Of a DNA stretch of 64,000 nt, positions 2,023 to 64,000 are shown piece by piece. The notes beneath the pieces were generated by a model. That model was given only the letters and a program-made list of their open reading frames with translations, was not told the DNA's origin and did no database searches. Every line of letters begins with the position of its first letter. The first letter of the stretch is position 1. The position numbers and the translations under genes are program-made. Source of the DNA: Macrostomum lignano (lineage: Eukaryota); NCBI GenBank assembly GCA_002269645.1, contig NIVC01000302.1, positions 192,303-256,302 of the forward strand, written 5' to 3'.

Positions 2023-2969
2023 TCATTCAAGCCCGGTGCTGATGACTCCCAGTTCCTCTAGCAGCGATTTCGGCTCGTCGCATTCCTGAAAATTTTAATT
2101 CGGAAATTCTAAGAGTTCTTTTAGCTGAATAATATACGCCAGTAGTTTAAAACTTTCTCAAGCAATTGTGAAAGACAGTTGACAATCCATTATAACAAAC
2201 TGGCTTCTCGTGCATAGGAAGAGTCCCAGCTGGCACGTATACTTTTGATAATCTGATTTTAAATTCTTATTTCAAACACGTACTTCTTGCAGGAGATCTT
2301 GCGCAGCAATTGCTTTCAGCACATTCTTCTTGCTGGTCTCCTGAACCTCGCCAGCCAGCATGAATTCGTCTAGCATGAAGTAGGCCCGCTCGAAATTAAA
2401 TATGATGTCCAGCTCGCACACCTGCGCATAATTTATTGCATGTTGCTATGGAACTTATATTATAAGAATTTATATAAAATATATCAATTAAAAAGGATGT
2501 AAAAATGCAAACGTTTCACGCTTACACTGCCAAAGTATTTGTCCAACAGTTCAACATAGCGATGAATAATTTCCAAGCAGAGAAGCTCGTTGTCCTGCTG
2601 CTCGATGCCGCAGCAAAAGTACAAACTGGCATATCTGAAATTAATTAAATTTTGCCGTGAAGATGAAAAATATACAAAAATCATCTCTTTTCTGCCTCAC
2701 CTTTTATACACAATCTTTAAATCTTTCCACTCAATAAAGGCGCACATCTTGGGCTTCCGCGCAAGCACCATGGTCATCACATCGCGAATTATCTTCTTTT
2801 TAGCTTTCTCCGAGTGAGATGTATACCATTTTTGGAGACGCAATTTCCCTTGTCGACTGAATAGAAGCATATAGTGCATCTGAAAATGAAGACAATAAGA
2901 TTTTCAAATGGCTACACATGTTCTTTGTGCCACCAGTTAACAGTTGCTTATACGTAATGCTCCTACCAT
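2023..2969 (-). CDS. AP1S: AP-1 clathrin adaptor complex sigma subunit, about 163 aa, 5 coding exons
   Basis: Exons (minus strand): 2969-2967 (ATG only, followed by GTAGGA), 2879-2701, 2634-2526, 2421-2284, 2085-2023. All introns are GT-AG and phases are consistent. Protein [20 protein letters not shown]...[56 protein letters not shown]... is a typical sigma-1 adaptin. Confidence 0.95.
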
Positions 2970-4306
2970 TTTAATACAGTTATAGAAGTCGACGAAACAA
3001 TTTTTTTGTATTACAATCCACGTTTTCTTCTATCTAAATTTGACTTGACTTATAACTCTGCAATGTAAGGAGACAACTCTTAAAGGTAATGGAAGTCTCA
3101 GATCAGAGACACTGAGGAACGGAATTAATCGTAAATAAAACTTGTAAATCGCAAAAATTTAAGCCGATACCTGATGTAAATACAAAAAAAAATGTCGAAG
3201 GTAAATTCAGAAGCACTATTTTTTAAATGCAAGGCATTTTATAAAGTTAAATATATTAGTATGTTCCACAATTATCATTATAACAAAGTAACTTTTTTTA
3301 AATAAAAAATTTTGCAATAAAATAGGTTATATTGCTAAAATACATATTTTTGTGTATTTATTTTTTTAAAATCATGCTGATTTTTGTTCTTTAACACCTG
3401 TAAAAAAATTCGTGCGTGGCACGCGTTTTTAACTTGTATGTTCCTGTAAAATTTAATATCTTTCCATGCCAAATTATAGAGAACTTTGTCTCAGCTTTTG
3501 CCCTTTAGAACAAGTCCCAAGTCTATCTACCTTGCTAGCTACGCCTGCAATGTGTATGCCCGGCATCCTGATATCCTGCTCTCCGCAGCATCTGTGCAAG
3601 AAATTTTGAGTCGAAAATCCATTTTTGCATGGGAAAATTCTCTAAAAATAGTAATTGTCTTGACCTGACTTCCTGACTATAGGATTAGGATTATAATTTT
3701 TCTAGAATCGTAATATTTTAGAAAAGATATTTAGAGTTTTAGTATCAGTTTGATTAAGATCCAATTCTACCTCTTAATTTTATACCTTCAAGGTTTAAGG
3801 CTTAAGGCTTTATTGATATAGTAGTAGTATACATTTAAATATATTTCCTATAGATCTGTCTAGGGCTATCTGTATTACCTCGATATATTTATTTATTATA
3901 TTATTATTACATTAGACACTTATGATATTATATTAAGACAAAATGAAGACAAAATGTTGCTATTCTTTTACTTAGGAAAGTGGCCTTTATATGAGCCAAT
4001 TCAATTTGTTAAAGACTGTGCCATGGATTACCTATGCTAAATATGTATACAGAGGTATAGATTTATAATGCACAGAATTTCATTGTTAATAGTTATAAAT
4101 ATAGTAATCTATATCACTTTAATAGTAATAAAAACTCTACATTGGAATATTGGATGCTTTTTTAAAAATGTTTTGGTTAAACTTATTTATATAATAAAAC
4201 TCAATTTAAACTATATATGTTATATAAAACTAAAAGTATAATGATGGTGATAGTATCTATAATATAATGATAAGATTCTTAGATATCAAGGGGAAGGGTC
4301 TAGTAG

Positions 4307-31711: not shown

Positions 31712-34700
31712 ATGCCAAAGCAGCAGCGACGTACCTCAGCCGCCTGCAGTCGTCGCATAGCCGACTATTTTCTGCCAGCAAAATCGGCACCCAGTGCGCT
31801 CGAATCGTCCTGCTTTATTGTTGAAAATTGTAATGATAATGAGCAAAGCGAAGGTAGAAAGCTGCTATCCTCCGCGCCACTGGTGCGTCGTCAAGCATTC
31901 CTTGCTGCTGACTTTTGTCAGCCTGGGCCAGCTAGTGAGAAGGACTCGGATAAGGGAGTTTCTGCTTCCAGATTCTGTTGGCCTTTCCCGCCCGCTTGGT
32001 GCATCCACGTTGGCTGGCAAGCTCCAGCATCGCTGTTCAGTGACAGCTGTTTAGCTGGCGTGTGCACCGCTGACTGCACTACTGGCAGTGTACTTTATAA
32101 CTATGGCGATCGAGGGAACTCGGCTAGCTTGATTGACTCCGCCGCTGCTGTTGTCCAGTTCCGGTTGGACCGCCTGCCAATTGTTGGCGAACATTTCAAT
32201 ACAGCCGCTGAGTTGGCCAATGTGCGCGCATTGCAGCCAGGTTTCCCAGCTGGTCGCTACCTGACCGAGCTGCGTGCGGCTATTGCTAATACTAATGCTA
32301 ATAACAATAGAGGGCTACCTTGCTCCCGTCGCTCTCTTGACGAACTTCTGGCGCCTCGCTGCGCAGCTGGCGTGCTTGGCAACGCTGAAGCTGTGAGAAA
32401 TTTGTCAGATTGGCTGGCTTCAGCTGCAGTTTCGAATAGTAGTTGCTCGAATCGCGTGGCGCTAATTGAAGGCCCCGGCCGGAGCTGCGTAGCCCGGGCG
32501 ATTGCGCGTCAGCATGGCTTGCGCGTTTTTGAAATTGGCGCCGAGGAGCGGCGACACGGGGCTAAGCTGGCGCAGCGGCTGCACCAGGCGGCCACGTGTT
32601 GTCAGGTGGAGCGAAAGCGGCGTCATCGCAACGATTCGGACGCTGAAGATGAGACTGATTCGCTCGATGGCGCACCTGTAAGCTTGCGGTTAATGGCCTA
32701 TTGAGTGAGTTTACTGTATAAAAATATTCGCAGGAAGGTTTTAGGCACACTATTTGCGGGCAACATCGTCTCACTACTGGCGCTGATGGCAAGTCTGCAC
32801 ATTAACTTTAATTTTGACATCCTGAACTCAGACCCAGGCTGTCAAATGGCACTGGAATTCTAAATAAATACATAATTTATTATTTATATCTTAATATATA
32901 TCTACAGTTTATTTAGGTTTAGGCCCAGAGGGGAGACCCATTGCACAAACGCGCTCGCAGAACAGGCGGGAGTGGCAGGCAGCAGCAGCCTGAGAGGGGT
33001 CAGTGCAGAGCGCCTGCAAATTAGCGCTTGTAAAGCAAATTGACGCAATTTGTGTCAAATAAAATCGAATACAGCAACTGTATAAAATGTTTATAGCGGC
33101 CATCATAGCAAACTAGTTTCATTTACATAAAACTCAACGATGTTATTAAAAAATTGCGAAACACCTGCAAAACATCACGTGCTAATGCCGATTACCTAAA
33201 CGTGTTTTATTGGGCTAGTTTCTATCTAAAACTGACGACTAGAAGGGCCTGTCAACAGAGGCAAAAAATTAAATCCTAATCTCAAAGTCTATAGTTTCAT
33301 GCACGATATCACTGATGTGCGCAGGCTGATAAGGTTAAAAAAATGTTCTATACTGTCAGTCAAAAGTTCCGGAACCCTTGCTTGCTGGCTGAGTCTATGG
33401 AGCAAACACACATGGGAACGAATCGGTTTGCGCGCAGTGTTCAGCCTGGCTAACATTAGTCTATGGCCAAAACTTGTGTTGAAATCAACAGGCTCTTATG
33501 GATTCTTGTGCAGTCAGCTTTCATGTGAGAGTAAAAAAGAGTAAAAAACAATTGCTTGTTTGTCTTTTCCTCACTTTTTTTCTCTAACCTTTATGTACAT
33601 AACACTGGCCTGTTCACACGCGCTCCTTCGAATAAACTTTTTCTTGACCACATCATGGAGCTGAGATCCGCAGCTTTCATTTGAATCAAGTTACAATTGA
33701 AACGGACTGAAATTATGTCCGCTAGAAGACATCGTAGCAAGGGTTCCGGAACTTTTGACGGACAGTATACTTTCTATATTTGCTAAATTGCGGGGCAAAA
33801 AAATTCAGGTTGAAAAAGTTCACCCATTCATTCTAATGAAAGTTGAAACGTCCGCTACATACGATACAATTTCTGTTAATGTAATGGAGCTTTTGTCTAT
33901 GGTAGCAAGGCTGGCACAGCGGAATTTAATTTGGTCCAACAAGCATCAATTTGGTCCATAGCGACTATGAAACCCAGTAATGAGTTACAGCTGCAGTGTA
34001 TTACGATTTATATAAACAAATTTCACTGTGCCAATACAAGGTGACGTCACAAATGCAATCTGTTCAACTATAACAAAACAAAAAAAAGCATTTCAACATG
34101 TCAAAACTCCGCTTCCATCACGAGGTCCCTTGGCGTTTGTTCGACAGTCTTAGCAAATGGTCCACGATTATGTGACTGATCTTGCTCCCCTGCAACAGTT
34201 GCAAATGAGACATTGCTCTCGTCCTCACTGCTTGTGTCAGTCATGTCTGAATTAAGATCTGGGGGTGAAGCCAAAGATCATATATACACAAGATGGGCCA
34301 TCATTCACCGCTTATGTGGCCATAGAAGCTAATGTAAAAGAAGAAGCAACTCGCGACAGCGCGAGAATCAGCTACTGAACTCAGTAGTCTCTACAGTGCA
34401 TGCATCATTTTTAATTTGATTGAGTAGCTTTTTATTTATTTCATGAAAAGTTCTATCACATTCTCAAAAATAGCGTCCCTAAGCTACTGAACTCAAAATT
34501 TAAGCAACCCATGTCGGGTTTTTTTCGCACAAGTGACGAAAAACAGCGGTCGCGCTTTCCCTATTGCTGCAATACAAAGTGGCGCATTTAGGGAATAAAG
34601 ATCTATGGGTGATGCTATGAACGAAATTAAATGCTACTGTGCCAGCCTTGCTACCATAGACAGAAGCTCCATTACTTTGGCAAACGTATCTTGGATTAGG

Positions 34701-35997
34701 CTGTGAAAAGTCCCGGGTTCGATTCCTGATGTGCCCACACGTGTGCGTGCTTTAATTTGCGAAAGCGCCAACCAACGCATTCACAAATCCGCAGGCCCTA
34801 TCCGTCAGCAGCTCCTGGCTAATCTTGCTAGACGATGCCGATCAACCGTTGGACGACGAGCCATCGTTGCGTCGCCTAGTGTCCGGCGTCTGCGCATCCA
34901 GTCGCAAGCCCCTGCTGTTGGCCGCCGCCGACGCCGAGTCGCTACGACGCGGTCTCGGCCTGACCGACGCGGCGCCGATTTTTAAGCTACGCCGGCCCAG
35001 TCGACCTCTCGTGGCGGCCTACGCTCGCGTGGTCTGCCTGGCTCTTGGCTGTCGATTGTCGGCCGACGCGGCAATCGAACTGGTCGACGCCTGCCGTGGC
35101 GACATTCGCCAACTGTTGAACCTGGTGCACTTTGTATTGCCGGAATCTGGCGCCGGTGATTGTCGATTGTCGATTGCGGTACCGCCGGCGCCTATTGATG
35201 CTGCACTGCTGCTTCTAGGAGGAACTAATTCTGCTGCTTCTACGCTGAATACGATTTCGCAATCTGCCGACGTCCTCGCCTTCGCCGACTGGCTGCGTAA
35301 ACGTCGTCGCCGATGCGCCGAGGCGGCTGATCAGTTGGCGTCGTCGGGGCTCAGCCTGTTAGCTCGGCTTTCTTTACCTAGCAAACAGATTGGCCAGTCA
35401 CTGTCTGGAGGATCAGCTGAGTTGCCTAGCAACCAGACTGGCCAGTCGCTGTCAGGAAAAGGATCAGCTGAGTTGCCTAGCAACCAGACTGGCCAGTCGC
35501 TGTCAGGAAAAGGATCAGCTGAGTTGCCTAGCAACCAGACTGGCCAGTCGCTGTCAGGAGGAGGATCAGCCGAGTTGCCTAGCAACCAGACTGGCCAGTC
35601 GCTGTCAGGAAAAGGATCAGCTGAGTTGCCTAGCAACCAGACTGGCCAGTCGCTGTCAGGAGGAGGATCAGCCGAGTTGCCTAGCAACCAGACTGGCCAG
35701 TCGCTGTCAGGAGGAGGATCAGCTAAGTTACCTAGCAACCAACTGCCACTGATAGAGCCGCGGCCAGGTCTCGGTCGTCTACTCCGAGACCTTCGCCAGC
35801 CGCTGCCCAGCTGTCGCCCGTTCGGTCGCCAGGAGTCCTTGGACCGAGCTGAATTCGCCCGCTGCCTGGCCGCATCCGCTGGCTTCAACAGGCGTTCGCT
35901 TGTTCGATTAGTTGATCGTAAACTCAAATTGTCGCTCAGCGATTCCGCTATGCACTACCTGTTGAAATGCAACACGTTGGCAAGCTCAGAGTCCTAG
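31712..35997 (+). CDS. ATAD5: ATAD5/ELG1-like RFC large subunit, about 722 aa, 2 exons
   Basis: Exons 31712-32677 (donor GTAAGC) and 34795-35997 (acceptor CCGCAG), phase 0. Motifs: N-terminal RRIADYF; ALIEGP...ARAIARQHGLRVFEIGAEERRHG...LHQAATCCQV (compare ATAD5 FEVNASSQRSG..LKEATQSHQV); WLILLDDAD; SSRKPLLL; KLRRPS; CRGDIRQLLNLVHF. Confidence 0.75.
33353..33765. mobile_element. Tc1/mariner-type MITE in the ATAD5 intron, 413 bp
   Basis: TA|CTGTCAGTCAAAAGTTCCGGAACCCTTGCT ... AGCAAGGGTTCCGGAACTTTTGACGGACAG|TA. About 30-bp TIRs with 1 mismatch and a TA TSD. Confidence 0.85.
35374..35745 (+). repeat. In-frame 51-bp tandem repeat (about 7 copies) in ATAD5 exon 2
   Basis: Encodes (LPSNQTGQSLSG[K/G]GSAE)n. 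Confidence 0.9.
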
Positions 35998-36249
35998 ATA
36001 CCGTTCGCTAGATGCATTTTATATGTGCTCATTTTTTGGCAATCTGTGTTTTCTGTTAACTAAATTTACATCAATTTAACAATTGACGCAATGTGCATTT
36101 ATGGATGTGTGTTATTACTACTTATATGTATATTAATTTATTTATTAACGCCTTCGTTAATTGAAATTTTGGACAGTACAAATAATACTTTTTTTAAATC
36201 GTCGTTTGATATTTTAAACTGATTTAAAATAAATTTAGTTGCTACGCCA

Positions 36250-36450
36250 CCACCAGCCTCCCAGATCCTCAGTTGCTGTCCTGCCAGTCTCCCAGATCCT
36301 CAGTTGCTGTGCTGCCAGTCTCCCAGATCCTCAGTTGCTGTGCTGCCAGTCTCCCAGATCCTCAGTTGCTGTGCTGCCAGCCTCCCAGATCCTCAGTTGC
36401 TGTGCTGCCACCCTCCCAGATCCTCAGTTGCCGTGCTACAACCCTCCCAG
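36250..36450 (+). repeat. 31-bp minisatellite between ATAD5 and CTNNBL1
   Basis: Unit CCTCCCAGATCCTCAGTTGCTGTGCTGCCAG. Confidence 0.93.
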
Positions 36451-36581
36451 ATACTAAATTCTCAGACCCTGCTTCTCACTGCTAACATTCCAAGGCGCCT
36501 GAAACTGAAGCTACGTGTAGGCTCCGGCCCAATTCCTTTACCATCGAGAATCGAGATATAAAATTTCCCTTACATTTGCAG

Positions 36582-39500
36582 GACATCACCGAGGTTCTGT
36601 CCTACAAGCCGGCCACGCCCGGCCAGCGCCGGACGCGTTTCTCGGACAACACGGACACAGGCTACGTGGAGCGGAAGCGAGCTCGTCTGGCCGTTGCCGC
36701 CGCCACCGCCTCAGCCTCAGCGTCGGGTACCGGCGCTGGCGTCGCTCGATCATCTCGAGTGCCGCCCTCTGCATCGGCGCCGCAGCAGCCAGCTGGCCTT
36801 AATAAAGAGGCCGTCCTGCGCGCCCTCGAAGCCGACGACAATGCGGAGGGCGATGGCGCGAAAGTCGACGGCGACGATGCCGACGCTTCCAAGCCGTCAA
36901 AGGCTGACAGCGTGTCCGGGATGCGCCTGCTGATGCTTCAACTGGAGAAGCGAGCGGCTAGGAATGCCGAACTTCGAGTGAAATATTCGGATAATCCGGA
37001 GAAGTTCATGGAGTCCGAGGTTGAACTGCACTCAGCTCTGCAGGAGCTGCACACCTTGCCCACTGTGCCAGCCGCTTATCCTGTGCTGTGCGAACTGCCT
37101 GTACTGGACACCCTGCTGCAGTTGGTGCTGCACGAGAACACCGACATTTCTATTGCTGTCATTGATCTAATAGAAGAGATGACAGACACTGATGTATTGG
37201 CCGAGAATCCGGACGATACTGAACAGCTGATTGCCAAACTGATGGATGCCCAGCTGGTCATGATGCTGGTGCAGAATCTTGACCGTCTGGATGAGACTAT
37301 CAAGGAGGAGGCTGACGGAGTGCATTCGTCTTTTGGTTAGTGATGTTGCTGTGCTTGTGTTATTTGGAGAATTTTAGCTCGTATGACTAATCCTCCTTCA
37401 CTGGGGTCTGTTTCACTTGTTCAGTTAAGCTAAACGTCTGTTCACTCTGTTGAATGACGAGCTGGTCACCATGACAGTCTATACTGGTCACTCTCTGACT
37501 AGCAATCCTGGTCACTTTGCCTGACAATCTGGTCACTGACTGACAATCTGGCTATTTTCTGACTGACATCTGGTCACTGACTGACAATCTGGCTATTTTC
37601 TGACTGACATCTGGTCACTGACTGACAATCTGGCTATTTTCTGACTGACACCTGGTCACTCTAAATGACCATTTGGTCACTCTGCCTGACATTCTAACCG
37701 CTTTCTAACTAACAATCTGGTCACTATCTGACAGACAATCTGGTCACTATCTGACAGACAATCTGGTCACTTTCTGACTGATACAGTCTGGTCACTCTCT
37801 GACTGACAACCTGGTCACTCTCTGACTGACAGTCTGGTCACTCTCTGACTGACAATCTGGTCACTCTCTGACTGACAAGCTGGCCACTTTCTGACTGACA
37901 ATCTGGTCACTGCTCTCCCCAATCGCAGGCATAATCGAGAACCTGTGCGAGGCCCGACCGGACTGCCTGGAGCAGATGGCGTCTAAGCAAGGCCTGCTAG
38001 CCTGCTTGCTTAAACGCATTGGCAAGCGGGGCTTCAGTCCCAATAAGCTGTACGCTAGCGAGCTATTGGCCATACTATTGCAAAGCTCCGAGCCCAATCG
38101 TCTGCTACTAGGAGAGCTCAAAGGCGTTGATATTCTGCTCAACCAGCTGGCCCATTATAAACGGCAGGATCCGGCAGATTCTGAGGAGCGCGAGCTGATG
38201 GAGAATCTCTTTAATTGTCTGTGCAGCGCCCTGCTAGCCAAGGCTAATAAAGACCGATTCCTGCGAGGCGAAGGGCTGCAATTGATGAATCTGATCCTCA
38301 GGGAGAAGCGGGTTGCCAGGCCGTCGGCTCTGAAGGTAGCCTGACTGACTGACTCACTGACTGACTGACTGACTGACTGACTGACTTATTGACTCACTCA
38401 CTGACTCACTGACTCACTGACTGACTCACTGACTGACTCACTGACTGACTGACTGACTGACTGACTGACTGACTTATTGACTCACTCACTGACTCACTGA
38501 CTCACTGACTGACTCACTGACTGACTCACTGACTGACTCACTGACTGACTGACTGACTCACTGACTGACTGACTGACTCACTGACTGACTGACTGACTCA
38601 CTGACTGACTGACTGACTGACTGACTGACTGACTGACTGACTGACTGACTGACTGACTGACTGACTTATTGACTCACTCACTGACTCACTGACTCACTGA
38701 CTGACTCACTGACTGACTCACTGACTGACTCACTGACTGACTGACTGACTCACTGACTGACTGACTGACTCACTGACTGACTGACTGACTCACTGACTGA
38801 CTCACTGACTCACTGACTCACTGACTGACTGACTGACTGACTGACTGACTGACTGACTGACTTATTGACTCACTCACTGACTGACTGACTCACTGACTGA
38901 CTGACTGACTGACTGACTGACTGACTGACTGACTGACTGACTTATTGACTCACTCACTGACTCACTGACTCACTGACTGACTCACTGACTGACTCACTCA
39001 CTGACTCACTGACTGACTGACTGACTCACTGACTGACTGACTGACTCACTGACTGACTGACTGACTGACTGACTGACTGACTGACTTATTGACTCACTCA
39101 CTGACTCACTGACTCACTGACTCACTGACTGACTCACTGACTGACTGACTGACTCACTGACTGACTGACTGACTCACTGACTGACTGACTGACTCACTGA
39201 CTGACTGACTGACTGACTGACTCACTCACTGACTCACTGACTCACTGACTGACTCGCTGACTGACTGACTGACTTATTGACTCACTAACTGACTCACTCA
39301 CTGACTCACTCACTGACTCACTGACTGACTCACTGACTGACTGACTGACTCACTGACTGACTCACTGACTGACTCACTGACTCACTGACTGACTGACTGA
39401 CTCACTGACTGACTGACTGACTCACTGACTGACTCACTGACTGACTGACTGACTCACTGACTCACTGACTCACTGACTGACTCACTGACTGACTGACTGA

Positions 39501-42500
39501 CTGACTGACTGACTTATTGACTCACTTACTGACTCACTGACTCACTGACTGACTCACTGACTGACTCACTCACTGACTCACTGACTCACTGACTGACTGA
39601 CTGACTCACTGACTGACTGACTGACTGACTCACTGACTGACTGACTGACTGACTGACTGACTGACTTATTGACTCACTCACTGACTCACTGACTCACTGA
39701 CTGACTCACTGACTGACTCACTGACTGACTGACTGACTCACTGACTGACTGACTGACTCACTGACTGACTGACTGACTCACTGACTGACTGACTGACTGA
39801 CTGACTGACTCACTCACTGACTCACTGACTCACTGACTGACTCGCTGACTGACTGACTGACTTATTGACTCACTCACTGACTCACTCACTGACTCACTCA
39901 CTGACTCACTGACTGACTCACTGACTGACTGACTGACTCACTGACTGACTCACTGACTGACTCACTGACTGACTCACTGACTCACTGACTGACTGACTGA
40001 CTCACTGACTGACTGACTGACTCACTGACTGACTCACTGACTGACTGACTGACTGACTCACTGACTCACTGACTGACTCACTGACTGACTGACTGACTGA
40101 CTGACTGACTTATTGACTCACTCACTGACTCACTGACTCACTGACTGACTCACTGACTGACTCACTGACTGACTGACTCACTGACTGACTGACTGACTGA
40201 CTGACTGACTGACTGACTGACTCACTGACTGACTGACTGACTGACTGACTGACTCACTGACTGACTGACTGACTCACTGACTGACTCACTGACTGACTCA
40301 CTGACTGACTCACTGACTGACTCACTGACTGACTGACTGACTGACTGACTGACTGACTGACTGACTGACTGACTGACTGACTGACTGACTGACTGACTGA
40401 CTTATTGACTCACTCACTGACTCACTCACTGACTCACTGACTGACTGACTGACTGACTGACTGACTGACTGACTCACTGACTGACTGACTGACTCACTGA
40501 CTGACTGACTGACTCACTGACTGACTCACTCACTGACTGACTGACTCACTGACTGACTTATTGACTCACTGACTGTCTCACTGACTGACTGACTGACTGA
40601 CTGACTCACTGATTCACTGACTGACTCACTGACTGACTGACTCACTCACTCACTGACTGACTCACTCACTCACTGACTGACTCACTGACTGACTCACTGA
40701 CTGACTCACTGACTCACTAACTGACTCACTGACTCACTCACATAACCACCGCAGGTGCTGGACTACGCACTGAACGGGCCAGACGGTGCGGATAACGCCT
40801 TAAAATTCGTGGACATTCTCGGCCTAAGAACTATCTTCCCGGTGTTTATGCGACCGCCAAAACCGAAAAAAAGCGGCTTCTCAGTACAAGAGATTGAAGA
40901 GCACCTGTGCTCAATATTGCACAATCTGTTGCGGCACTGCGCTAATTCGCCTACGCACAAGACTAGGATTCTGGCTAAGTTTGTTGAGAACGATCACGCC
41001 AAGATGGAGCGGCTGGCTGAGCTGCATTTCAAATGGCGCGATTCTGTCAAAGCGGCTGACAGGCGGCTGCTGGCTGAACGGCGCCAGCCGGAGCTGTGGA
41101 ATGCTAGCACTGAGGAGGAGCTGGAGGAGGAAGTCTATCTGAGACGGTGCGGGCTGGTTAACAGATTAAATCTGTCAAGAATTAGAGGATTAACGCTGCT
41201 GAGATTAGAGGGTCACTGTTGGCGTTGGTGGTTTGTGGATTTTATCGATAGGAGATTAGCGAATTATCCATAGGAGATTAGCAGATCATCTATAGGAGAT
41301 TAGCAGATCATCTATAGGAGATTAGCGGATTTTCTATAGGAGATTAGCGGATTATCTATAGGAGATAAGCGGATTATCTATAGGAGATTAGCGGATTATC
41401 TATAGGAGATTAGCTGATCATCTATAGGAGATTAGCTGATCATCTATAGGAGATTAGCTGATCATCTATAGGAGATTAGCTGATCATCTATAGGAGATTA
41501 GCTGATCATCTATAGGAGATTAGCTGATCATCGATAGGAGATTAGCTGATCATCTATAGGAGATTAGCAGATCATCGATAGGAGATTAGCTGATCATCTA
41601 TAGGAGATTAGCAGATCATCTATAGGAGATTAGCTGATCATCGATAGGAGATTAGCTGATCGTCTATAGGAGATTAGCAGATCATCTATAGGAGATTAGC
41701 AGATCATCTATAGGAGATTAGCGGATTTTCTATAGGAGATTAGCGGATTATCTATAGGAGATAAGCGGATTATCTATAGGAGATTAGCGGATTATCTATA
41801 GGAGATTAGCTGATCATCTATAGGAGATTAGCTGATCATCTATAGGAGATTAGCTGATCATCTATAGGAGATTAGCTGATCATCTATAGGAGATTAGCTG
41901 ATCATCTATAGGAGATTAGCTGATCATCGATAGGAGATTAGCTGATCATCTATAGGAGATTAGCAGATCATCGATAGGAGATTAGCTGATCATCTATAGG
42001 AGATTAGCAGATCATCTATAGGAGATTAGCGGATTTTCTATAGGAGATAAGCGGATTATCTATAGGAGATTAGCGGATTATCTATAGGAGATTAGCTGAT
42101 CATCTATAGGAGATTAGCTGATCATCTATAGGAGATTAGCTGATCATCTATAGGAGATTAGCTGATCATCTATAGGAGATTAGCTGATCATCTATAGGAG
42201 ATTAGCTGATCATCTATAGGAGATTAGCTGATCATCGATAGGAGATTAGCTGATCATCTAAAGGGGATTAGCGGATTTTCTATAGGAGATAAGCGGATTT
42301 TCTATAGGAGATTAGCGGATTTTCTATAGGAGATTAGCGGATTTTCTGTAGGAGATTAGCGGATTTTCTATAGGAGATTAGCGGATTTTCTATAGGAGAT
42401 TAGCGGATTTTCTGTAGGAGATAAGCGGATTTTCTTTAGGAGATTAGCGGATTTTCTGTAGGAGATTAGCAGATTATCTATGAGATTAGCGGTTTATCTG

Positions 42501-42914
42501 TAGGGGATTACAAAATTACCTGTCTTGATAAGGCAATCATACTTGTTGAAAAGATTAGTGAGATTTGAAAAAAATATGACAAGCCAATTTAGTATCATCT
42601 TTTTAAAGCTAATCCTATATGACTCCACCAGGCTATTTTAGTGTTTAATTTTCCTACTTGTCCTCAGACTGGAAATGGGCCTGTTCACCCTGCAGCTGGT
42701 GGACCTAATCCTGCTCCAAGTGTGCGCCATGTCGCCGCCAGATGCTGGCGTTGTTCGGCCAGTCCGCCAGATGTTCAACATGCGATCCAGTCCGCTGCCC
42801 GCCGTGCACGGAGTTGTCAAAGAGCACCTGGCGCACAGCGATGACGCAGAGGAGAAGGCCCGGCTGGAGCCGCTGCTGGCCGTGTTTAAAGAACGATTCG
42901 GATTGGCCGAGTGA
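36582..42914 (+). CDS. CTNNBL1: Beta-catenin-like protein 1 (PRP19/CDC5L complex), about 600 aa, 4 exons; start codon not in the genomic frame
   Basis: Exons 36582-37335, 37929-38335, 40755-41146, 42668-42914 (1800 nt, phases consistent). Motifs: DITEVLSYKP, NAELRVKYSDNPEKFMESEVELH, LLQLVLHENTDISIAVIDLIEEMTD, NKLYASELLAILLQ, EERELMENLFNCLCS, FLRGEGLQLMNLILREK, VLDYAL, FVENDHAKMERLAELH, YLRRLEMGLFTLQ. Confidence 0.95.
37470..37915 (+). repeat. About 21-bp CTGACTGACAATCTGGTCACT minisatellite in CTNNBL1 intron 1
   Basis: Direct observation; degenerate copies. Confidence 0.88.
38341..40742 (+). repeat. (CTGA/CTCA)n tetranucleotide array filling CTNNBL1 intron 2
   Basis: Starts 5 nt after the donor and ends about 12 nt before the acceptor. 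A recurring CTTATTGACTCAC landmark indicates higher-order duplication. Confidence 0.97.
41250..42500 (+). repeat. 22-bp minisatellite in CTNNBL1 intron 3
   Basis: Unit CTATAGGAGATTAGCTGATCAT and variants. Confidence 0.96.
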
Positions 42915-42958: not shown

Positions 42959-45900
42959 CATAGTTGCCACCCCTGCTCAAATTTTGAGCAATTGCTCAAA
43001 AAAATTTAAGCTGCTCAAATGCTCAATTTTATTTGGTTCTGCTCAAAAAAGTAATTATTTTTTTGCTTGTCTATTTTTTACTTCTATTGCTAAAAAGTCA
43101 TTCTAAATAAAGTAAGAAAGGTCAAAATGATTCTTGTTCCTTCTTTTTGGGTCATTAGTTTTGTAATTTTCTCTATAAACTTATACGTATAAGTCTATGT
43201 ATAAGTATATTATATGTATAAGTAGTGAAAGTACTAAAGTGGGAATCTAGGGAAGTAGTAGTTTAGGTACTACGCTCGTATAAAATTCAAGTCACATTTC
43301 AGCCACATTCTAATGCCCACTGATCGAAAAACGAAGTGGAATGCTACCTGGTTATCTGAACATGACCATTCTGGGGTCAAAATATCACGATGGTGCCAGA
43401 AAGACGACGACAATGACGATGAAGCCACATGTAGATTGTGCAACCGTGGAGTAAATTTTCGTCAACATGGCATTGCTGCTTTGCGACAACATGCTGATGG
43501 TGCAAAGCACAAGGCTCTTTCTCGGGCTATGGTTGCTGCTTACAGTCAGCAAAAAATCAATGCTTTTTTCCCAATCACTCCATCTGAGAACCAACAACTA
43601 AAAAAAGTGGAGGCAGAGGCATCTTTGCCCCAACAGACCATGGCGGCGAGCCTACGATTCGGACTGCTTGTTGTTCGGAAAGACCTATCATTCAAAACTA
43701 TGGACGAAATTTCTGAAACACTGCCTGTTGCTATTCCTGATAGCAGTGTTGCTCAGAACTTTTCATGTGGAAGAACCAAGACAACGTACCTGGTCACTGA
43801 TGCACTTGCCCCACATGCTAAGGAGGAAATGTTTAAGAGCCTTCGTGACTCTCCCTTTTCAATTCTGCTTGATGAGGGCACGAAACGTGACCGCTGCTGG
43901 CTGGTTTTACTGGCCCGCACTTTCTGCATTGAAAGGCAGAAGGTAATTCTTGTCTACATTGGTTCAGAGGAGCTTAAAAATTCATCGGCGTCAAATATGA
44001 AGGACACAGTTTTGTCGTTGCTATCCCAAGCCAAATTGCCTGCAAGGAATGTTATTTCCGTGATGACAGATTCCTGCAATGCAATGAGAGGTATGCGAGA
44101 TAGCTTGATGAGTAATCCTTGTTGACAAAGATCCTGTCCCTAAAATAATTCACCTTTCACATTTCAGGCATCCACAATGGACTTCTCACCAAGCTGAAAG
44201 ATGCTATGCCGCAGCTTATTGATGTTGGAGGCTGCAGTCTCCATCATGTACATAATAGTGTTCAATATGCAACTAAGGCATTTGACAGCACTGGCGAGGC
44301 TGAAGGACTGATGGATGATGTCTATAACTATTTCCGATTTGTGAAAAGGCGCGGAGCATTCCATGAGGTATGAATTTAAACTTTGCTTAATCTTGAATGT
44401 GCTTTTCTTCCCTGACAAAAATTAAAATTTTTAGATTCAGGATGCACTGGACCTGGCTGAACACGTGTTCATCCGCCGAGTCGAAACTCGCTGGCTCCAG
44501 ATTCTAAACGTCATTCGACGGATTCTAGAGCAATGGGAGGCCCTGAAGCTGCACTTTGAGAAAGCTAGTGCCTCAGAACTGGACAACATTCGGGCACGAC
44601 GAATCAAGCTGGCCCTTACTGATGAGATGCTAGCCAAGCTCCAGTTCTTAAGCCAAGTGCTGCCAAGATGCGAAGCATTCGAGAAAATTTTTCAGCGGGA
44701 GAGCACTCAGGTTCACCACTTGGCTTCTTCGCTGGAAAAGCTTTTTAGTGACATTCTTCTTTGCTTCATGCGGAGTGAAGTTGTTGAAAACAGCCGCTCT
44801 CTTTCAGACCTGGTTGACAGGGCTACTGATCGCAACAATCAACTAATGAACAAAGATCTAATCATCGGCTCGGCCACCCGTGAGACTGTTGCACGGTTAC
44901 GTCAGATGGAGCAGATTGGCTTTTTTAAGTCAGTTCGCTGCTTCTTTTCTGAAATTATTAGTCGACTGTTTGCCTACTTACCTTTCAACAACAAGGTGCT
45001 TTCTGGCCTTCAGTTTGTGGATCCTGAATACATGTTGGGATCAGACTTCAACTTTGACAACAGCATTCTACGTGTTGGGCGTGCTATGAGCACAGTCATT
45101 TCTGCCGACTTGCTGGATGATATCCGGCTGGAAGCTACAAGGCTTCGACTGACCTGCCCAACTGAGAAAGCAAAGGAGACACCAGAGGCTTTTTGGGCAC
45201 AGCTTTCTGTTGAAGATTATCCTCATCTTTCTAAACTAGGTCGTGCTGCCTGCTGCATACCGCACGGTAATGCAGATAGTGAACGAGTTTTGAAATGGGT
45301 GGCCAACAACTTGACCAAGCAGCGCAATAGGCTAGGAGAAGTTACGCTGGACTCGATTTTGGCTGTGAAAGTTTGGATGAAATGCAACAGCACTGGCCCA
45401 GCCAAGGTCACTATTGATTCTAACCTGCTGGACACAGCTTTTCAAGCCAAAAGCAAAGCCGATGAGCGACGACGAGCTAAGCAAAACGAAAAGGCCATGA
45501 AGCGACTTCAGCAAGCACTGGAGGAGCAGCGACGACTGGTTACTGAAAAGGAGAAAGAGCTCCAGCAGCAGAAGCAACAAAAGCAGGCAGAGGCCCAAAC
45601 AAAGATTGACGAAATGCGCAAGAAGGCTCAGGACATGCTCGCACTTGCTGATAAGGAGGAGCATGCCCTACGCAAGCGGCATGGTGACAGTGAAGAAGCA
45701 AAATCAAAGAAGAAGAAGAAATGACTATGTTTGTACATTTTATCAGCTTAAAATTTACTGAATGTTTGTAGTAACTATAACTCTAAGCTTCATGCTGTAG
45801 TCTTTATTGTCTGAGGTGCTTCTTTTTATTTTTGTCTGCGCAACTTGAAACAATTTTCCTTGTACATGTAAACCATTTTTGTTTTCGAATTTACTAAATG

Positions 45901-46010
45901 TCTGTCATAGTGAAAAGAAAAACTGGTTTGTGGGAAGGATGCGAGTTTTTGACCTGCGCTAAAAATTAGTCCTTGCGCTACTTTTCTTCAAAAACTGGGT
46001 GGCAACTATG
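42959..46010 (+). mobile_element. Full-length autonomous-looking hAT transposon, 3052 bp
   Basis: Perfect 14-bp TIRs CATAGTTGCCACCC / GGGTGGCAACTATG and a perfect 8-bp TSD GTGCGCTT (42951-42958, 46011-46018). Repeated subterminal TGCTCAA motifs on the left and TGCGCTA on the right. Intact transposase inside. Confidence 0.95.
43313..45724 (+). CDS. hAT-family transposase, about 755 aa, 3 exons
   Basis: Exons 43313-44090, 44168-44367, 44435 (or 44441)-45724. N-terminal zinc finger (W..W...ATCRLC...LRQHADGAKH); catalytic FSILLDEGT, MTDSCNAMRG, GCSLHHVHN (CxxH), RRVETRWL, PHGNADSERV; basic C-terminal coiled coil with a KKKKK NLS-like end. No stops. Confidence 0.92.
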
Positions 46011-46093
46011 GTGCGCTTCTTTAGGGTTATTTTTCCTATATGGTTAGAGGTTCTTCATAACAGCATATAGACAGGTGGAATTCTAAGGCTCAT

Positions 46094-46745
46094 GATGCTG
46101 TTAATAGTGCTGTTAAGGAAGTTGTTAATGCTGTTAAAAATGCTGTTATTAGTCCTGTTAAGGATACTGTTAATAGTGCTGTTAATGATGCTGTTAATAG
46201 TGCTGTTAATGATGCTGTTAATAGTGCTGTCAAGGATGTTGTTAATAGTGCTGTTAAGGATGCTGTTAATAGTGCTGTTAAGGATGCTGTTAATAGTGCT
46301 GTTAAGGATGCTGTTAATAGTGCTGTTAAGGATGCTGTTAATAGTGCTGTTAAGGATGCTGTTAATAGTGCTGTCAAGAATGCTGTTAATAGTGCTGTTA
46401 AGGATGCTGTTAATAGTGCTGTTAAAACTGCTGTTAATAGTGCTGTTAAGGATGCTGTTAATAGTGCTGTCAAGAATGCTGTTAATAGTGCCGCTAAGGA
46501 TGCTGTTAATAGTGCTGTCAAGGATGCTGTTAATAGTGCTGTTAAGGATGCTGTTAATAGTGCTGTTAAGGATGCTGTTAATAGTGCTGTCAAGGATGCT
46601 GTTAATAGTGCTGTTAAGGATGCTGTTAATAGTGCTGTCAAGAATGCTGTTAATAGTGCTGTTAAGGATGCTGTTAATAGTGCTGTTAAGGATGCTGTTA
46701 ATAGTGCCGCTAAGGATGCTGTTAATAGTGCTGTTAAGGATGTTA
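46094..46745 (+). repeat. 24-bp (12+12) minisatellite
   Basis: Unit GCTGTTAATAGTGCTGTTAAGGAT. Confidence 0.96.
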
Positions 46746-47224
46746 TTACTCGTAATAGTGCTCGAAATCCGATTCAGACATTGGACACAGGAAAGTCAGC
46801 TAAATCTCATGGGTTAATAAGTTTTCAACTTATAAACGGGCTCTTAGATTTCTTTACAAACTTCGGAATATAAAAAAACAAATTACACTGTTAAAAAACA
46901 CAATAGTCACTTTTTGTGCCGCTTCAGTTTTTTTTAGTTTTTGTCAGCCTGCTTTGACATGCTTTTGTATTATACCTGATGCATATATTGAAGGGACAGT
47001 CGGTTACAGAGTCGGACTAATTGTAGCCTGTATTCATCATGTGCTTGTCCGCTCTATAGTTATAATGGCCTGTTTTTCATATAATGCGCTTAATAAGTAA
47101 ATGTAGCACTGATCGATACTAATAGTAGTATATGATTCTATGTTCATTGTTCAATCGTATATGCGTGTGATCTTATTTCCGTTTCATTCATTTACTGTAA
47201 TTGTTTAATTTTCAGGACTTAGTT

Positions 47225-49555
47225 TCAAGCTTGTGAAGTTTCCAGCTTGTTGAGTGAAGCTTCGAGATTGTAAAGTGAAGATTCCAGCTTGTTGAGTGAA
47301 GCTTCGAGATTGTAAAGTGAAGTTTCAAGCTTGTTGAGTGAAGCTTCGAGATTGTAAAGTGAAGTTTCAAGCTTGTTGAGTGAAGCTTCGAGATTGTAAA
47401 GTGAAGATTCGAGCTTGTTGAGTGAAGCTTCGAGATTGTAAAGTGAAGATTCGAGCTTTTTGAGTGAAGCTTCGAGATTGTAAAGTGAAGATTCCAGCTT
47501 GTTGAGTGAAGCTTCGAGATTGTAAAGTGAAGATTCCAGCTTGTTGAGTGAAGCTTCGAGATTGTAAAGTGAAGTTTCCAGCTTGTTGAGTGAAGCTTCG
47601 AGATTGTGAAGTGAAGCTTTTGAGATTGTGAAGTGAAGCTTTGAGATTGTAAAGTGAAGCTTTTGAGATTGTGAAGTGAAGCTTTTGAGATTGTGAAGTG
47701 AAGCTTCGAGATTGTGAAGTGAAGCTTTTGAGATTGTGAAGTGAAGCTTTTGAGATTGTGAAGTGAAGCTTCGAGATTGTGAAGTGAAGCTTCTGAGATT
47801 GTGAAGTGAAGCTTTTGAGATTGTGAAGTGAAGCTTTTGAGATTGTGAAGTGAAGCTTTTGAGATTGTGAAGTGAAGCTTCTGAGATTGTGAAGTGAAGC
47901 TTTTGAGATTGTGAAGTGAAGCTTCGAGATTGTGAAGTGAAGCTTTTGAGATTGTGAAGTGAAGCTTTTGAGATTGTGAAGTGAAGCTTCGAGATTGTGA
48001 AGTGAAGCTTCGAGATTGTGAAATGAAGCTTTGAGATTGTAAAGTGAAGCTTTTGAGATTGTGAAGTGAAGCTTTTGAGATTGTGAAGTGAAGCTTCTGA
48101 GATTGTGAAGTGAAGCTTTTGAGATTGTGAAGTGAAGCTTCGAGATTGTGAAGTGAAGCTTCGAGATTGTGAAGTGAAGCTTTTGAGATTGTGAAGTGAA
48201 GCCTTTGAGATTGTGAAGTGAAGCTTCGAGATTGTGAAGTGAAGCTTTGAGATTGTGAAGTGAAGCTTTTGAGATTGTGAAGTGAAGCTTTTGAGATTGT
48301 GAAGTGAAGCTTTGAGATTGTGAAGTGAAGCTTTTGAGATTGTGAAGTGAAGCTTCTGAGATTGTGAAGTGAAGCTTTTGAGATTGTGAAGTGAAGCTTT
48401 TGAGATTGTGAAGTGAAGCTTCGAGATTGTGAAGTGAAGCTTCGAGATTGTGAAGTGAAGCTTTTGAGATTGTGAAGTGAAGCCTTTGAGATTGTGAAGT
48501 GAAGCTTCGAGATTGTGAAGTGAAGCTTTGAGATTGTGAAGTGAAGCTTTTGAGATTGTGAAGTGAAGCTTTTGAGATTGTGAAGTGAAGCTTTGAGATT
48601 GTGAAGTGAAGCTTTTGAGATTGTGAAGTGAAGCTTCTGAGATTGTGAAGTGAAGCTTTTGAGATTGTGAAGTGAAGCTTCGAGATTGTGAAGTGAAGCT
48701 TTTGAGATTGTGAGGTGAAGCTTTTGAGATTGTGAAGTGAAGCTTCGAGATTGTGAAATGAAGCTTCGAGATTGTAAAGTGAAGCTTTTGAGATTGTGAA
48801 GTGAAGCTTTTGAGATTGTGAAGTGAAGCTTCGAGATTGTGAAGTGAAGCTTTGAGATTGTGAAGTGAAGCTTCGAGATTGTGAAGTGAAGCTTTGAGAT
48901 TGTGAAGTGAAGCTTTTGAGATTGTGAAGTGAAGCTTTTGAGATTGTGAAGTGAAGCTTTTGAGATTGTGAAGTGAAGCTTTTGAGATTGTGAAGTGAAG
49001 CTTCTGAGATTGTGAAGTGAAGCTTTTGAGATTGTGAAGTGAAGCTTCGAGATTGTGAAGTGAAGCTTCGAGATTGTGAAGTGAAGCTTTGAGATTGTGA
49101 AGTGAAGCTTTTGAGATTGTGAAGTGAAGCTTCGAGATTGTGAAGTGAAGCTTCGAGATTGTGAAGTGAAGCTTTTGAGATTGTGAAGTGAAGCTTTTGA
49201 GATTGTGAAGTGAAGCTTCGAGATTGTGAAGTGAAGCTTCGAGATTGTGAAGTGAAGCTTTGAGATTGTGAAGTGAAGCTTCGAGATTGTGAAGTGAAGC
49301 TTCGAGATTGTGAAGTGAAGCTTTGAGATTGTGAAGTGAAGCTTTTGAGATTGTGAAGTGAAGCTTTTGAGATTGTGAAGTGAAGCTTCGAGATTGTGAA
49401 GTGAAGCTTTTGAGATTGTGAAGTGAAGCTTTTGAGATTGTGAAGTGAAGCTTTTGAGATTGTGAAGTGAAGCTTTTGAGATTGTGAAGTGAAGCTTTTG
49501 AGATTGTAAAGTGAAGCTTTTGAGATTGTGAAGTGAAGCTTTTGAGATTGTGGAA
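47225..49555 (+). repeat. 20-22-bp minisatellite upstream of MSH2
   Basis: Unit GAAGTGAAGCTT(TT/T/C)GAGATTGT, about 100 copies, with a composite variant at the 5' end. Confidence 0.97.
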
Positions 49556-49743
49556 TTCAACAGTTTTTGTTTTCATCAACTGTTGACTGTTTGTCGTGTC
49601 GAAAAATGTATAAAATAGTGCTTTCATTGGTTTAAAGCAAGCCTAAGTTATGATTTACAATAAGCATGCAGTAAAGAGGTGAGAGACAATCTCATTTATT
49701 TGCCCTGAATTGCACTAAATTTCCAGCCGCCAGCTTGTCAAGC

Positions 49744-56791
<7,048 letters not shown>

Positions 56792-58317: not shown

Positions 58318-64000
<5,683 letters not shown>

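What the first reader, a model, noticed from the sequence alone, without database searches (positions are those of the whole stretch)
36570..36615. CTNNBL1 lacks a genomic start codon: Met1 may come from the AUG at the end of the spliced leader
Seen: the conserved N-terminus D-I-T-E-V-L-S-Y-K-P starts exactly after a clean acceptor (TTACATTTGCAG|GAC, 36582). The frame is closed by TAA at 36483 with no ATG in between, and the next in-frame ATG is 113 codons in (36921). I found no ATG|GT mini-exon in the about 580 nt back to the ATAD5 stop. Established: vertebrate CTNNBL1 begins MDVGELLSYQP, so exactly one residue (Met) is missing, and flatworm spliced leaders end in AUG that can initiate translation. 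Inference: SL(AUG)+GAC ATC gives MDITEVLSYKP, so translating this spliceosomal protein would depend on trans-splicing. By contrast, the AP1S gene here does carry its own cis ATG-only exon (2969-2967).
Basis: partly seen in the sequence, partly recalled or inferred. Interest (0 to 1): 0.78.

Follow-up and report, generated by a model that had tools for sequence, protein, structure and literature searches.

The report
CTNNBL1 start codon supplied by spliced leader
In the flatworm Macrostomum lignano the CTNNBL1 gene has no start codon of its own and almost certainly gets it from the AUG at the end of the trans-spliced leader. This mechanism has been known in flatworms since 2006, so this is an ordinary new example, not a new mechanism.

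Summary
The window is Macrostomum lignano, assembly Mlig_3_7, contig NIVC01000302.1.

- **The sequence.** CTNNBL1 (Pfam CTNNBL, E = 6.9e-160) begins at 36582, directly after ...CCTTACATTTGCAG, with codon 2 (GAC) of the metazoan N-terminus M-D-[VI]-x-E-L-L-S-[FY]-[KQ]-P. An in-frame TAA lies 99 nt upstream. There is no ATG in any frame in 36129-36581. The next in-frame ATG is at 36921, behind three out-of-frame ATGs.
- **The annotation.** GenBank annotates this gene (PAA85852.1) and a second copy (PAA77058.1) as 599-aa "partial" CDSs that start exactly at this acceptor. Because of the upstream stop, that is only possible if the transcript model's 5' end sits at the acceptor. The published pipeline sets such ends from leader-containing reads.
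- **The leader.** The published 35-nt M. lignano spliced leader ends in ATG. Joining it gives MDITEVLSYKP.
- **The neighbours.** The upstream ATAD5-like gene lies 584 nt away on the same strand and has an AATAAA. In the second copy the two genes share one transcriptional-unit name, which fits an operon.

I saw no leader-junction reads, so the evidence is strong but indirect (confidence about 0.85). The mechanism is established (Cheng et al. 2006) and has been noted for Macrostomum. This is a new member of a known kind and of low interest.

The parts
31712..35997 (+). Upstream ATAD5-like AAA+ gene. It has its own genomic ATG (MPKQQRR...) and a TAG stop at 35995-35997. It is the likely upstream cistron.
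   Evidence: Called gene L003 5131-9416, which is window 31712-35997. Close copies are named BOX15_Mlig001294g1/g3/g4. The only matches among solved structures are human ATAD5, E = 1.7e-6.
35902..35903 (+). GT inside the last ATAD5-like exon (CGCTT|GTTCGA). Older ML2-based models use it as the donor that fuses ATAD5-like to CTNNBL1.
   Evidence: UniProt A0A1I8FYJ3 (P0161) reads ...GFNRRSL|DITEVLSYKP. P0001 uses the same place in a shifted frame.
36101..36106 (+). ATGGAT followed by GTGTGT. It lies in the presumed 3' UTR of the upstream gene.
   Evidence: It is conserved in all three copies, like its whole surroundings. It is not used in the GenBank CDS.
36228..36233 (+). AATAAA, the likely poly(A) signal of the upstream gene. 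All six intergenic ATGs lie upstream of it.
   Evidence: It is conserved in L001 and L002.
36253..36452 (+). A 31-nt tandem repeat, 6.5 copies, in the intercistronic region (the outron). Copy number differs between the gene copies.
36483..36485 (+). In-frame TAA that closes the reading frame 99 nt upstream of the acceptor.
   Evidence: It is conserved in all three copies.
36568..36581 (+). 3' splice site CCTTACATTTGCAG, the presumed spliced-leader acceptor.
   Evidence: It fits [T/C]TNCAG. The same context occurs upstream of AP1S, with 2 hits against 0.04 expected.
36582..37335 (+). CTNNBL1 exon 1. It starts with codon 2 (GAC = Asp2); Met1 is not encoded in the genome.
   Evidence: The GenBank partial CDS starts here. 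Exon 1 differs between copies by only 4-5 substitutions and no indels.
36841..36879 (+). Three out-of-frame ATGs (36841, 36853, 36877), opening ORFs of 30, 26 and 18 codons. They precede the next in-frame ATG.
36921..36923 (+). Next in-frame ATG. A start here would drop the conserved N-terminus and the KRAR basic patch, and would begin about 14 residues inside the matched Pfam domain.
37929..38335 (+). CTNNBL1 exon 2.
   Evidence: The spliced product is identical to PAA85852.1.
40755..41146 (+). CTNNBL1 exon 3.
42668..42914 (+). CTNNBL1 exon 4, including the TGA stop.
   Evidence: The called gene ends at L003 16333, which is window 42914.
2967..2969 (-). Control: AP1S start codon at the end of a cis exon (ATG|GTAGGA), spliced to ...TTTTCAG|ATGCAC at 2879.
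   Evidence: The GenBank CDS runs from 2969 to 2023; the product MMHYMLLF... is complete.

Best explanation
CTNNBL1 of Macrostomum lignano is a spliced-leader trans-spliced gene whose genomic coding sequence starts at codon 2.

The pre-mRNA is probably a polycistronic transcript that also carries the upstream ATAD5-like gene. It is cut at the acceptor CCTTACATTTGCAG|GAC (36581|36582) and joined to the 35-nt leader, which ends in ...UUGCAUG. The leader's terminal AUG becomes the first AUG of the mRNA and lies directly in frame with GAC AUC ACC.... Scanning ribosomes would then make the 600-residue protein MDITEVLSYKP..., whose N-terminus matches other animals residue for residue.

Shown here:
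- the gene structure;
- the missing genomic ATG, in three gene copies;
- the 5'-partial CDS in the public annotation, starting exactly at the acceptor;
- the correct reading frame when the published leader sequence is joined.

Inferred:
- that the annotated 5' end reflects leader-containing reads;
- that translation starts at the leader AUG;
- that the two genes form an operon.
For: 1. Identity. The window is 100% identical to NIVC01000302.1 over 26,333 bases. The spliced product equals PAA85852.1. Pfam CTNNBL scores E = 6.9e-160.

2. The start codon is missing from the genome. There is an in-frame TAA 99 nt upstream, no ATG in 36129-36581, and the conserved motif starts at residue 2 immediately after the AG.

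3. The annotation. PAA85852.1 (this locus) and PAA77058.1 (copy L001) are both labelled 'partial', both are 599 aa, both begin DITEV, and both called genes start on the G of GAC. Given the upstream TAA, an ORF caller can only give a non-Met start exactly there if the transcript model's 5' end lies within 2 nt of the acceptor. In the published pipeline such ends are set by peaks of leader-containing reads (PMC5730564). The same annotation does find a cis exon ending in ATG for AP1S, so it does not simply miss such exons.

4. The leader ends in ATG followed by a GTAAG donor, and about 30% of genes are trans-spliced, with an excess of conserved genes (PMC8629364). The acceptor TTGCAG fits [T/C]TNCAG.

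5. In the modelled mRNA the leader AUG is first and in frame. The next three AUGs are out of frame, and the next in-frame AUG would remove 113 residues, including the conserved N-terminus.

6. Operon context. The upstream gene is on the same strand, 584 nt away. That falls to about 384 nt once the 200-nt tandem repeat is subtracted, under the published 1-kb operon threshold. An AATAAA sits at 36228. In copy L001 the two genes are Mlig001294g4 and g5, so they share one transcriptional-unit name.

7. Precedent. In S. mansoni the leader AUG is in frame in 28% of trans-spliced mRNAs, and more than 40 cDNAs need it (Cheng et al. 2006, as cited in PMC9851317). The final ATG of the Macrostomum leader has been called a likely translation start codon (PMC10468722).
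Against: - I saw no read, EST or cDNA carrying the junction ...TTGCATG|GACATC. The protein collection holds no M-prefixed version of the protein.
Only CDS coordinates were, so the leader site is deduced from the CDS start and not read from a track.
- Older ML2-based UniProt models join this acceptor in cis to a GT inside the ATAD5-like last exon (A0A1I8FYJ3). Flatworm acceptors can serve both cis- and trans-splicing (PMC12582326).
- The leader AUG has a T at position -3, a weak Kozak context.
- There is no protein-level evidence.
Confidence: 0.85

Rival explanations
1. An upstream cis exon supplies the start codon. Candidates are ATGGAT|GTGTGT at 36101-36106 (giving MDDITEV...) or a more distant exon spliced to 36582.
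For: ATGGAT followed by GT exists and is conserved in all three copies. Donors in this gene are themselves weak matches to GT[GA]AG (GTTAGT, GTAGCC, GTGCGG), so GTGTGT cannot be excluded on sequence. AP1S in the same window does use a cis exon ending in ATG.
Against: - The transcript-based GenBank CDS is 5'-partial at the acceptor in two copies. A cis exon would have extended it or made it complete, as happened for AP1S.
- The candidate lies about 105 nt after the upstream gene's stop and before its AATAAA, so it sits inside that gene's 3' UTR.
- It would add one residue relative to the gap-free match to orthologues.
Confidence: 0.05
2. CTNNBL1 is made as a read-through fusion with the ATAD5-like protein, by cis-splicing from 35901|35902 to 36582, as in UniProt A0A1I8FYJ3.
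For: A 1209-aa ML2-based model joins ...GFNRRSL to DITEVLSYKP in frame. A second ML2 model (P0001) uses the same donor. The two genes share a transcriptional unit in one copy.
Against: - The later RNA-seq-guided annotation separates the two genes, giving ATAD5-like its own stop and full 655 aa.
- Chimeric gene models split at leader acceptors are a described annotation artefact in flatworm operons (PMC12582326).
- ML2 models of this region are visibly frameshifted and chimeric.
- The donor GTTCGA is weak.
- An in-phase GT is easy for a gene finder to pick when no ATG is available.
- At most this is a minor isoform.
Confidence: 0.03
3. Translation starts downstream at ATG 36921, or at a near-cognate codon. 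This gives an N-terminally truncated protein, and the leader AUG is skipped or absent.
For: The leader AUG has a poor -3 base. ATG 36921 is in frame.
Against: - Three out-of-frame AUGs lie before 36921.
- The first 113 codons look coding: GC is 68% against 46% upstream, GC3 is 73%, there are no indels between copies, and the N-terminal motif and basic patch are conserved.
- Leader AUG initiation has been shown experimentally in another flatworm (Cheng et al. 2006, as cited).
Confidence: 0.05
4. It is an assembly error or a pseudogene copy: the real gene has a genomic ATG that this assembly lost.
For: The assembly is of a neopolyploid genome with duplicated and inverted blocks. Older ML2 models have indel errors.
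Against: Three separately assembled copies agree base for base around the acceptor. All four exons are intact in all three copies.
Confidence: 0.02

Closest known systems
Schistosoma mansoni mRNAs that use the spliced leader's 3'-terminal AUG as initiator methionine (Cheng, Cohen, Ndegwa and Davis, J Biol Chem 2006; cited in PMC9851317, PMC12582326, PMC7653826, PMC5832876)
   Same: A flatworm leader ending in AUG is joined in frame to an exon that lacks its own start codon. The leader AUG is the first AUG of the mRNA.
   Different: It is a different species (a free-living macrostomid) and a different leader sequence. Here there is no experimental proof of trans-splicing or of initiation for this gene.
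slORFs: open reading frames created by spliced-leader addition (slORFfinder, PMC9851317)
   Same: The ORF exists only on the trans-spliced transcript, and genome-only annotation misses its start.
   Different: slORFs in nematodes, Oikopleura and trypanosomes mostly use near-cognate NUG codons and often form alternative ORFs. Here a canonical AUG restores the ancestral, conserved Met1 of the main ORF.
Downstream genes of M. lignano operons (Ustyantsev and Berezikov 2021, PMC8629364)
   Same: A same-strand upstream gene lies within 1 kb after repeat adjustment. The intercistronic region is rich in repeats. The acceptor is of the [T/C]TNCAG type. The gene is conserved. The two genes share a transcriptional-unit name in one copy.
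   Different: That paper does not discuss the leader AUG as a start codon and does not mention this gene.
AP1S in the same window (cis exon ending in ATG)
   Same: Codon 1 is separated from codon 2 by a splice junction, and the acceptor context is similar.
   Different: The ATG is genomic (2969-2967) and is joined in cis, and the GenBank CDS is complete.

Membership tests
Flatworm mRNAs initiated at the spliced-leader AUG | The species has a leader RNA whose exon ends in AUG, directly before the GU donor. | tested here: met
   Species identified by 100% identity to GCA_002269645.1. The published M. lignano leader ends ...TTGCATG and is followed by GTAAG (PMC8629364). The leader gene itself is not in the window.
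Flatworm mRNAs initiated at the spliced-leader AUG | The mRNA is trans-spliced to the leader at the acceptor in question. | tested here: inconclusive
   Support is indirect but strong. The 5'-partial GenBank CDS starts exactly at the AG| in two copies, which given the upstream TAA requires a transcript 5' end at the acceptor. The pipeline sets such ends from leader-containing reads. No junction read was seen.
Flatworm mRNAs initiated at the spliced-leader AUG | The leader AUG is in frame with the main ORF, with no stop in between. | tested here: met
   The model mRNA (leader plus exon 1) gives MDITEVLSYKP... with the frame open.
Flatworm mRNAs initiated at the spliced-leader AUG | There is no genomic in-frame AUG that could give the conserved N-terminus. 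| tested here: met
   TAA at 36483, no ATG in 36129-36581, next in-frame ATG at 36921. The same holds in L001 and L002.
Flatworm mRNAs initiated at the spliced-leader AUG | Translation actually begins at the leader AUG. | not testable with these tools
   This needs N-terminal proteomics, ribosome profiling or a reporter.
CTNNBL1 (beta-catenin-like protein 1, Pfam PF08216) | A CTNNBL domain covers most of the protein. | tested here: met
   E = 6.9e-160, residues 100-564 of 599. The protein is 43-54% identical to named CTNNBL1 proteins of many phyla.
CTNNBL1 (beta-catenin-like protein 1, Pfam PF08216) | The conserved extreme N-terminus M-D-[VI]-x-E-L-L-S-[FY]-[KQ]-P is present. | tested here: met
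   DITEVLSYKP aligns to residues 2-11, and 22 of 23 orthologues start this way. Only Met1 is absent from the genome.
M. lignano operon (polycistronic unit resolved by trans-splicing) | A same-strand upstream gene lies within 1 kb (repeat-adjusted) of a trans-spliced downstream gene. | tested here: met
   The gap is 584 nt, or about 384 nt after subtracting the 200-nt tandem repeat. The threshold comes from PMC8629364.
M. lignano operon (polycistronic unit resolved by trans-splicing) | Both genes lie on one primary transcript. | tested here: inconclusive
   In copy L001 the genes are Mlig001294g4 and g5, which share a transcriptional-unit prefix. In this window's copy CTNNBL1 has its own unit name, Mlig011045g1. 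No RNA data were seen.

The most novel reading that the evidence does not exclude
All copies of CTNNBL1 in M. lignano have lost the genomic start codon for good: CAG now stands where ATG stands in other animals. A factor associated with the Prp19/CDC5L spliceosome complex could then be made only from leader-trans-spliced mRNA. That would be an obligate coupling, possibly a feedback, between trans-splicing and the supply of a splicing factor. It might be shared across Macrostomum or flatworms, and it might be marked by an extended acceptor signature, CCTTACA(T)TTGCAG, also seen at the 5' end of AP1S.
Probability: 0.12. Interest if true: 0.45.

Novelty: new member of a known kind. Interest (0 to 1): 0.22.

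Why it matters
The value is mainly practical.

- **Annotation.** The GenBank and UniProt entries for this protein are labelled partial or are chimeric, yet the ORF is very probably complete once the leader's ATG is added. The same is likely true of many "partial" M. lignano proteins, because the annotation pipeline trimmed the whole leader, ATG included.
- **Experimental design.** Anyone who designs transgenes, N-terminal tags, knock-ins or RNAi or in situ probes for such genes in this transgenic model needs two facts: the gene may have no promoter or start codon of its own, and an ATG must be supplied.

Biologically it is one more case of a mechanism shown in schistosomes in 2006. It does show that the mechanism also operates on a deeply conserved gene in a free-living, early-branching flatworm.

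Tried and rejected
- **Direct transcript evidence.** Neither the exon-1 query nor the full-length M-prefixed query found any protein starting MDITEV in the 5.8-billion-cluster collection. The 90% cluster holds only the two partial GenBank proteins and one chimera.
- **Papers and supplements.** Supplements of PMC5730564, PMC5816591, PMC5173321 and PMC12582326 mention neither CTNNBL1 nor the gene ids. PMC8629364 has no supplements held. Full-text searches for CTNNBL1 with Macrostomum, and for the gene ids, found nothing. Cheng et al. 2006 and Wasik et al. 2015 are not held, so they are cited only through papers that cite them.
- **The P0001 N-terminus.** I looked for the MPRASTGVPL N-terminus of UniProt A0A1I8FAJ8 as a possible real upstream exon. 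It is not encoded in the window. It corresponds to a shifted frame of the ATAD5-like last exon in an indel-ridden older assembly, so I rejected it as a gene-finder artefact. Its locus is not on record.
- **Rebuilding the ATAD5-like protein.** Enumerating GT-AG introns to rebuild the 655-aa protein gave 182 solutions, so I abandoned it and used a protein search instead.
- **Leader RNA gene or any Rfam family in the window.** None found.
- **Similarity between the acceptor regions and the leader sequence.** Only weak local matches, which I judged to be chance.
Full report
**What the window is.** The exon-1 peptide first hit a Macrostomum lignano UniProt model with long identical stretches in shifted frames. 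The full-length query then found GenBank protein PAA77058.1, "BOX15_Mlig001294g5, partial [Macrostomum lignano]", at 99% identity. Its cluster mate PAA85852.1, "BOX15_Mlig011045g1, partial", equals the product I spliced from the window. The locus of PAA85852.1 (L003, GCA_002269645.1, contig NIVC01000302.1) is identical to the window over all 26,333 bases. Window position x therefore corresponds to record position 192302 + x.

**Check of the observation.** The sequence reads ...aaatttcccttacatttgcag|GACATCACCGAGGTTCTGTCCTACAAGCCG, with GAC at 36582.
- In that frame a TAA lies at 36483-36485, and there is no ATG before 36921.
- The 584 nt between the upstream gene's TAG (35995-35997) and the acceptor hold six ATGs, all in 36012-36128. 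None is followed directly by GT, and 36129-36581 has no ATG in any frame.
- The gene model is four exons: 36582-37335, 37929-38335, 40755-41146 and 42668-42914. It encodes 599 residues. Pfam CTNNBL matches at E = 6.9e-160 over residues 100-564.
- Of 23 metazoan orthologues read in full, 22 begin M-[DE]-[VI]-x-[ED]-[LI]-L-[ST]-[FY]-[KQ]-P. These come from nemerteans, molluscs, arthropods, echinoderms, a hemichordate, a brachiopod, an annelid and a frog. The window's DITEVLSYKP aligns to residues 2-11 without a gap.

So exactly one residue, Met1, is not encoded. Two further copies in the same assembly (L001 on contig NIVC01000768.1, and L002 elsewhere on contig NIVC01000302.1) have the same acceptor, the same in-frame TAA and no in-frame ATG. 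All four exons are intact in both.

**What the public annotation implies.** Both GenBank CDSs are flagged partial, both are 599 aa, both begin with D, and both called genes start on the G of GAC. The in-frame TAA lies only 99 nt upstream. A 5' end upstream of that TAA would close the frame, and the ORF caller would then choose Met at 36921. A 5' end between the TAA and the acceptor would add residues such as ...FPLHLQ. The observed start is therefore only possible if the transcript model's 5' end lies within 2 nt of the acceptor.

In the published pipeline (PMC5730564), leader-containing reads were trimmed and mapped. Their peaks were used to cut transcriptional units into mRNAs with exact boundaries, and ORFs were then called with TransDecoder. 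In copy L001 the ATAD5-like gene is Mlig001294g4 and CTNNBL1 is Mlig001294g5. They share a transcriptional-unit prefix and have consecutive numbers, which fits one unit cut between them. A poly(A) site would lie near the AATAAA, about 350 nt upstream of the acceptor. A cut exactly at the acceptor therefore points to a leader-read peak.

As a control, the same annotation gives AP1S in this window a complete CDS (MMHYMLLF...) whose first codon is the genomic ATG at 2969-2967, followed by GTAGGA. The pipeline does recover cis exons that end in ATG when they exist.

**Mechanism.** The published M. lignano leader is CGGTCTCTTACTGCGAAGACTCAATTTATTGCATG, followed in the leader RNA gene by GTAAG. About 30% of genes carry it, with an excess of conserved genes. 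The top motif at trans-splice acceptors is [T/C]TNCAG, which TTGCAG here fits (PMC8629364).

Joining the leader to exon 1 puts its AUG at mRNA position 33, as the first AUG and in frame, giving MDITEVLSYKP.... The next three AUGs (36841, 36853, 36877) are out of frame and open ORFs of 30, 26 and 18 codons. The next in-frame AUG (36921) would remove 113 residues, including the conserved N-terminus and the KRAR basic patch.

The first 339 nt of exon 1 look coding. GC is 68% and GC3 is 73%, against 46% GC just upstream. Across the whole of exon 1 the three copies differ by only 4-5 substitutions and no indels, while the intergenic repeat region varies in length.

The surroundings fit an operon:
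- a same-strand upstream gene;
- an AATAAA at 36228, downstream of all six intergenic ATGs;
- a 31-nt repeat of 6.5 copies at 36253-36452;
- a repeat-adjusted distance of about 384 nt, under the published 1-kb criterion.

**Rivals.**
- **(a) A cis mini-exon such as ATGGAT|GTGTGT (36101-36106).** It exists, but it lies in the upstream gene's 3' UTR before the AATAAA. It would add a residue, and the annotation does not use it.
- **(b) A cis-spliced ATAD5-like/CTNNBL1 fusion.** UniProt A0A1I8FYJ3, from the older ML2 assembly, joins ...GFNRRSL|DITEV through a GT at 35902. ML2 models here are frameshifted or chimeric. Chimeras split at leader acceptors are a described artefact in flatworm operons. 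The later annotation gives the ATAD5-like gene its own stop.
- **(c) A downstream or non-AUG start.** The three decoy AUGs and the conserved N-terminus argue against it.
- **(d) An assembly error.** Three concordant copies exclude it.

None of the rivals exceeds about 5%.

**What is missing.** I could not see a read or cDNA with the leader-exon junction. The protein collection has no M-prefixed version. The supplements and full texts I could search do not mention the gene. The conclusion rests on an inference from CDS coordinates plus published pipeline logic, so my confidence is 0.85, not near-certainty.

**Comparison with what is known.** Use of the flatworm leader's terminal AUG as initiator methionine was shown for S. 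mansoni by Cheng et al. 2006: it is in frame in 28% of trans-spliced mRNAs, and more than 40 cDNAs need it (as cited in PMC9851317). Later flatworm genome papers repeat it as a general feature. For Macrostomum itself, Wiberg et al. [quoted passage not shown] No paper in the searchable library names CTNNBL1. The case is therefore a new member of a known kind. The idea that a spliceosome-associated protein depends on trans-splicing is a fair remark, but nothing here suggests regulation.

**Verdict.** The mechanism is ordinary for flatworms. The main value is as an annotation correction: the "partial" CDS is very probably complete once the leader's ATG is added.

Noticed in passing
window 36568-36581 (+) and 3058-3070 (-): Two presumptive mRNA 5' ends share nearly the same 3' splice-site context, CCTTACA(T)TTGCAG: the CTNNBL1 acceptor and a site 91 nt upstream of the AP1S start codon. 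The pattern CTTACATTN{0,2}GCAG gives 2 hits against 0.04 expected. If AP1S is trans-spliced there, the leader AUG would open an 8-codon uORF (MSYKSSQI*) ahead of the genomic ATG. This may be an extended trans-splice acceptor signature.
   Followed up: partly
window about 42960-46095 (annotated gene 43310-45724, +): A hAT-family transposase gene (Dimer_Tnp_hAT, 756-aa annotated product) sits between CTNNBL1 and the MutS-family gene in this copy only. It is absent from the other two copies, L001 and L002.
   Followed up: partly
NIVC01000302.1: L005/L003 (record about 191-245 kb) against L002/L004 (record about 300-343 kb, opposite orientation): One contig carries two inverted copies of the whole AP1S ... 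ATAD5-like - CTNNBL1 - MutS block, at about 93-98% identity. This could be a real inverted duplication in this neopolyploid, or two homeologous regions joined in assembly.
   Followed up: no
L002 14388-18865: The third copy has all four CTNNBL1 exons intact (99-100% identical, no gaps), but no CDS is on record for it.
   Followed up: partly
UniProt A0A1I8FYJ3, A0A1I8GA01, A0A1I8FAJ8 (P0161, P0165, P0001): Older ML2-based gene models of this region are chimeras of neighbouring same-strand genes (ATAD5-like+CTNNBL1; a 2198-aa GT23-domain fusion with ATAD5-like) or are frameshifted. Gene finders merge operon genes that lack their own ATG.
   Followed up: partly
L001 16793 (corresponding to about window 49729, +): The CDS of the MutS-family gene begins SSMSATDE, two codons before its Met, at a position not preceded by AG. 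This looks like a 5'-partial call reaching an ordinary transcript start, not a leader site.
   Followed up: no
window 47215-49642, 60077-62681, 11231-11725, 54245-56553 and others: There are very long tandem-repeat arrays in introns and intergenic DNA, including about 2.4 kb and about 2.6 kb arrays that read open in several frames. This fits the repeat-rich intergenic regions described for M. lignano operons.
   Followed up: no
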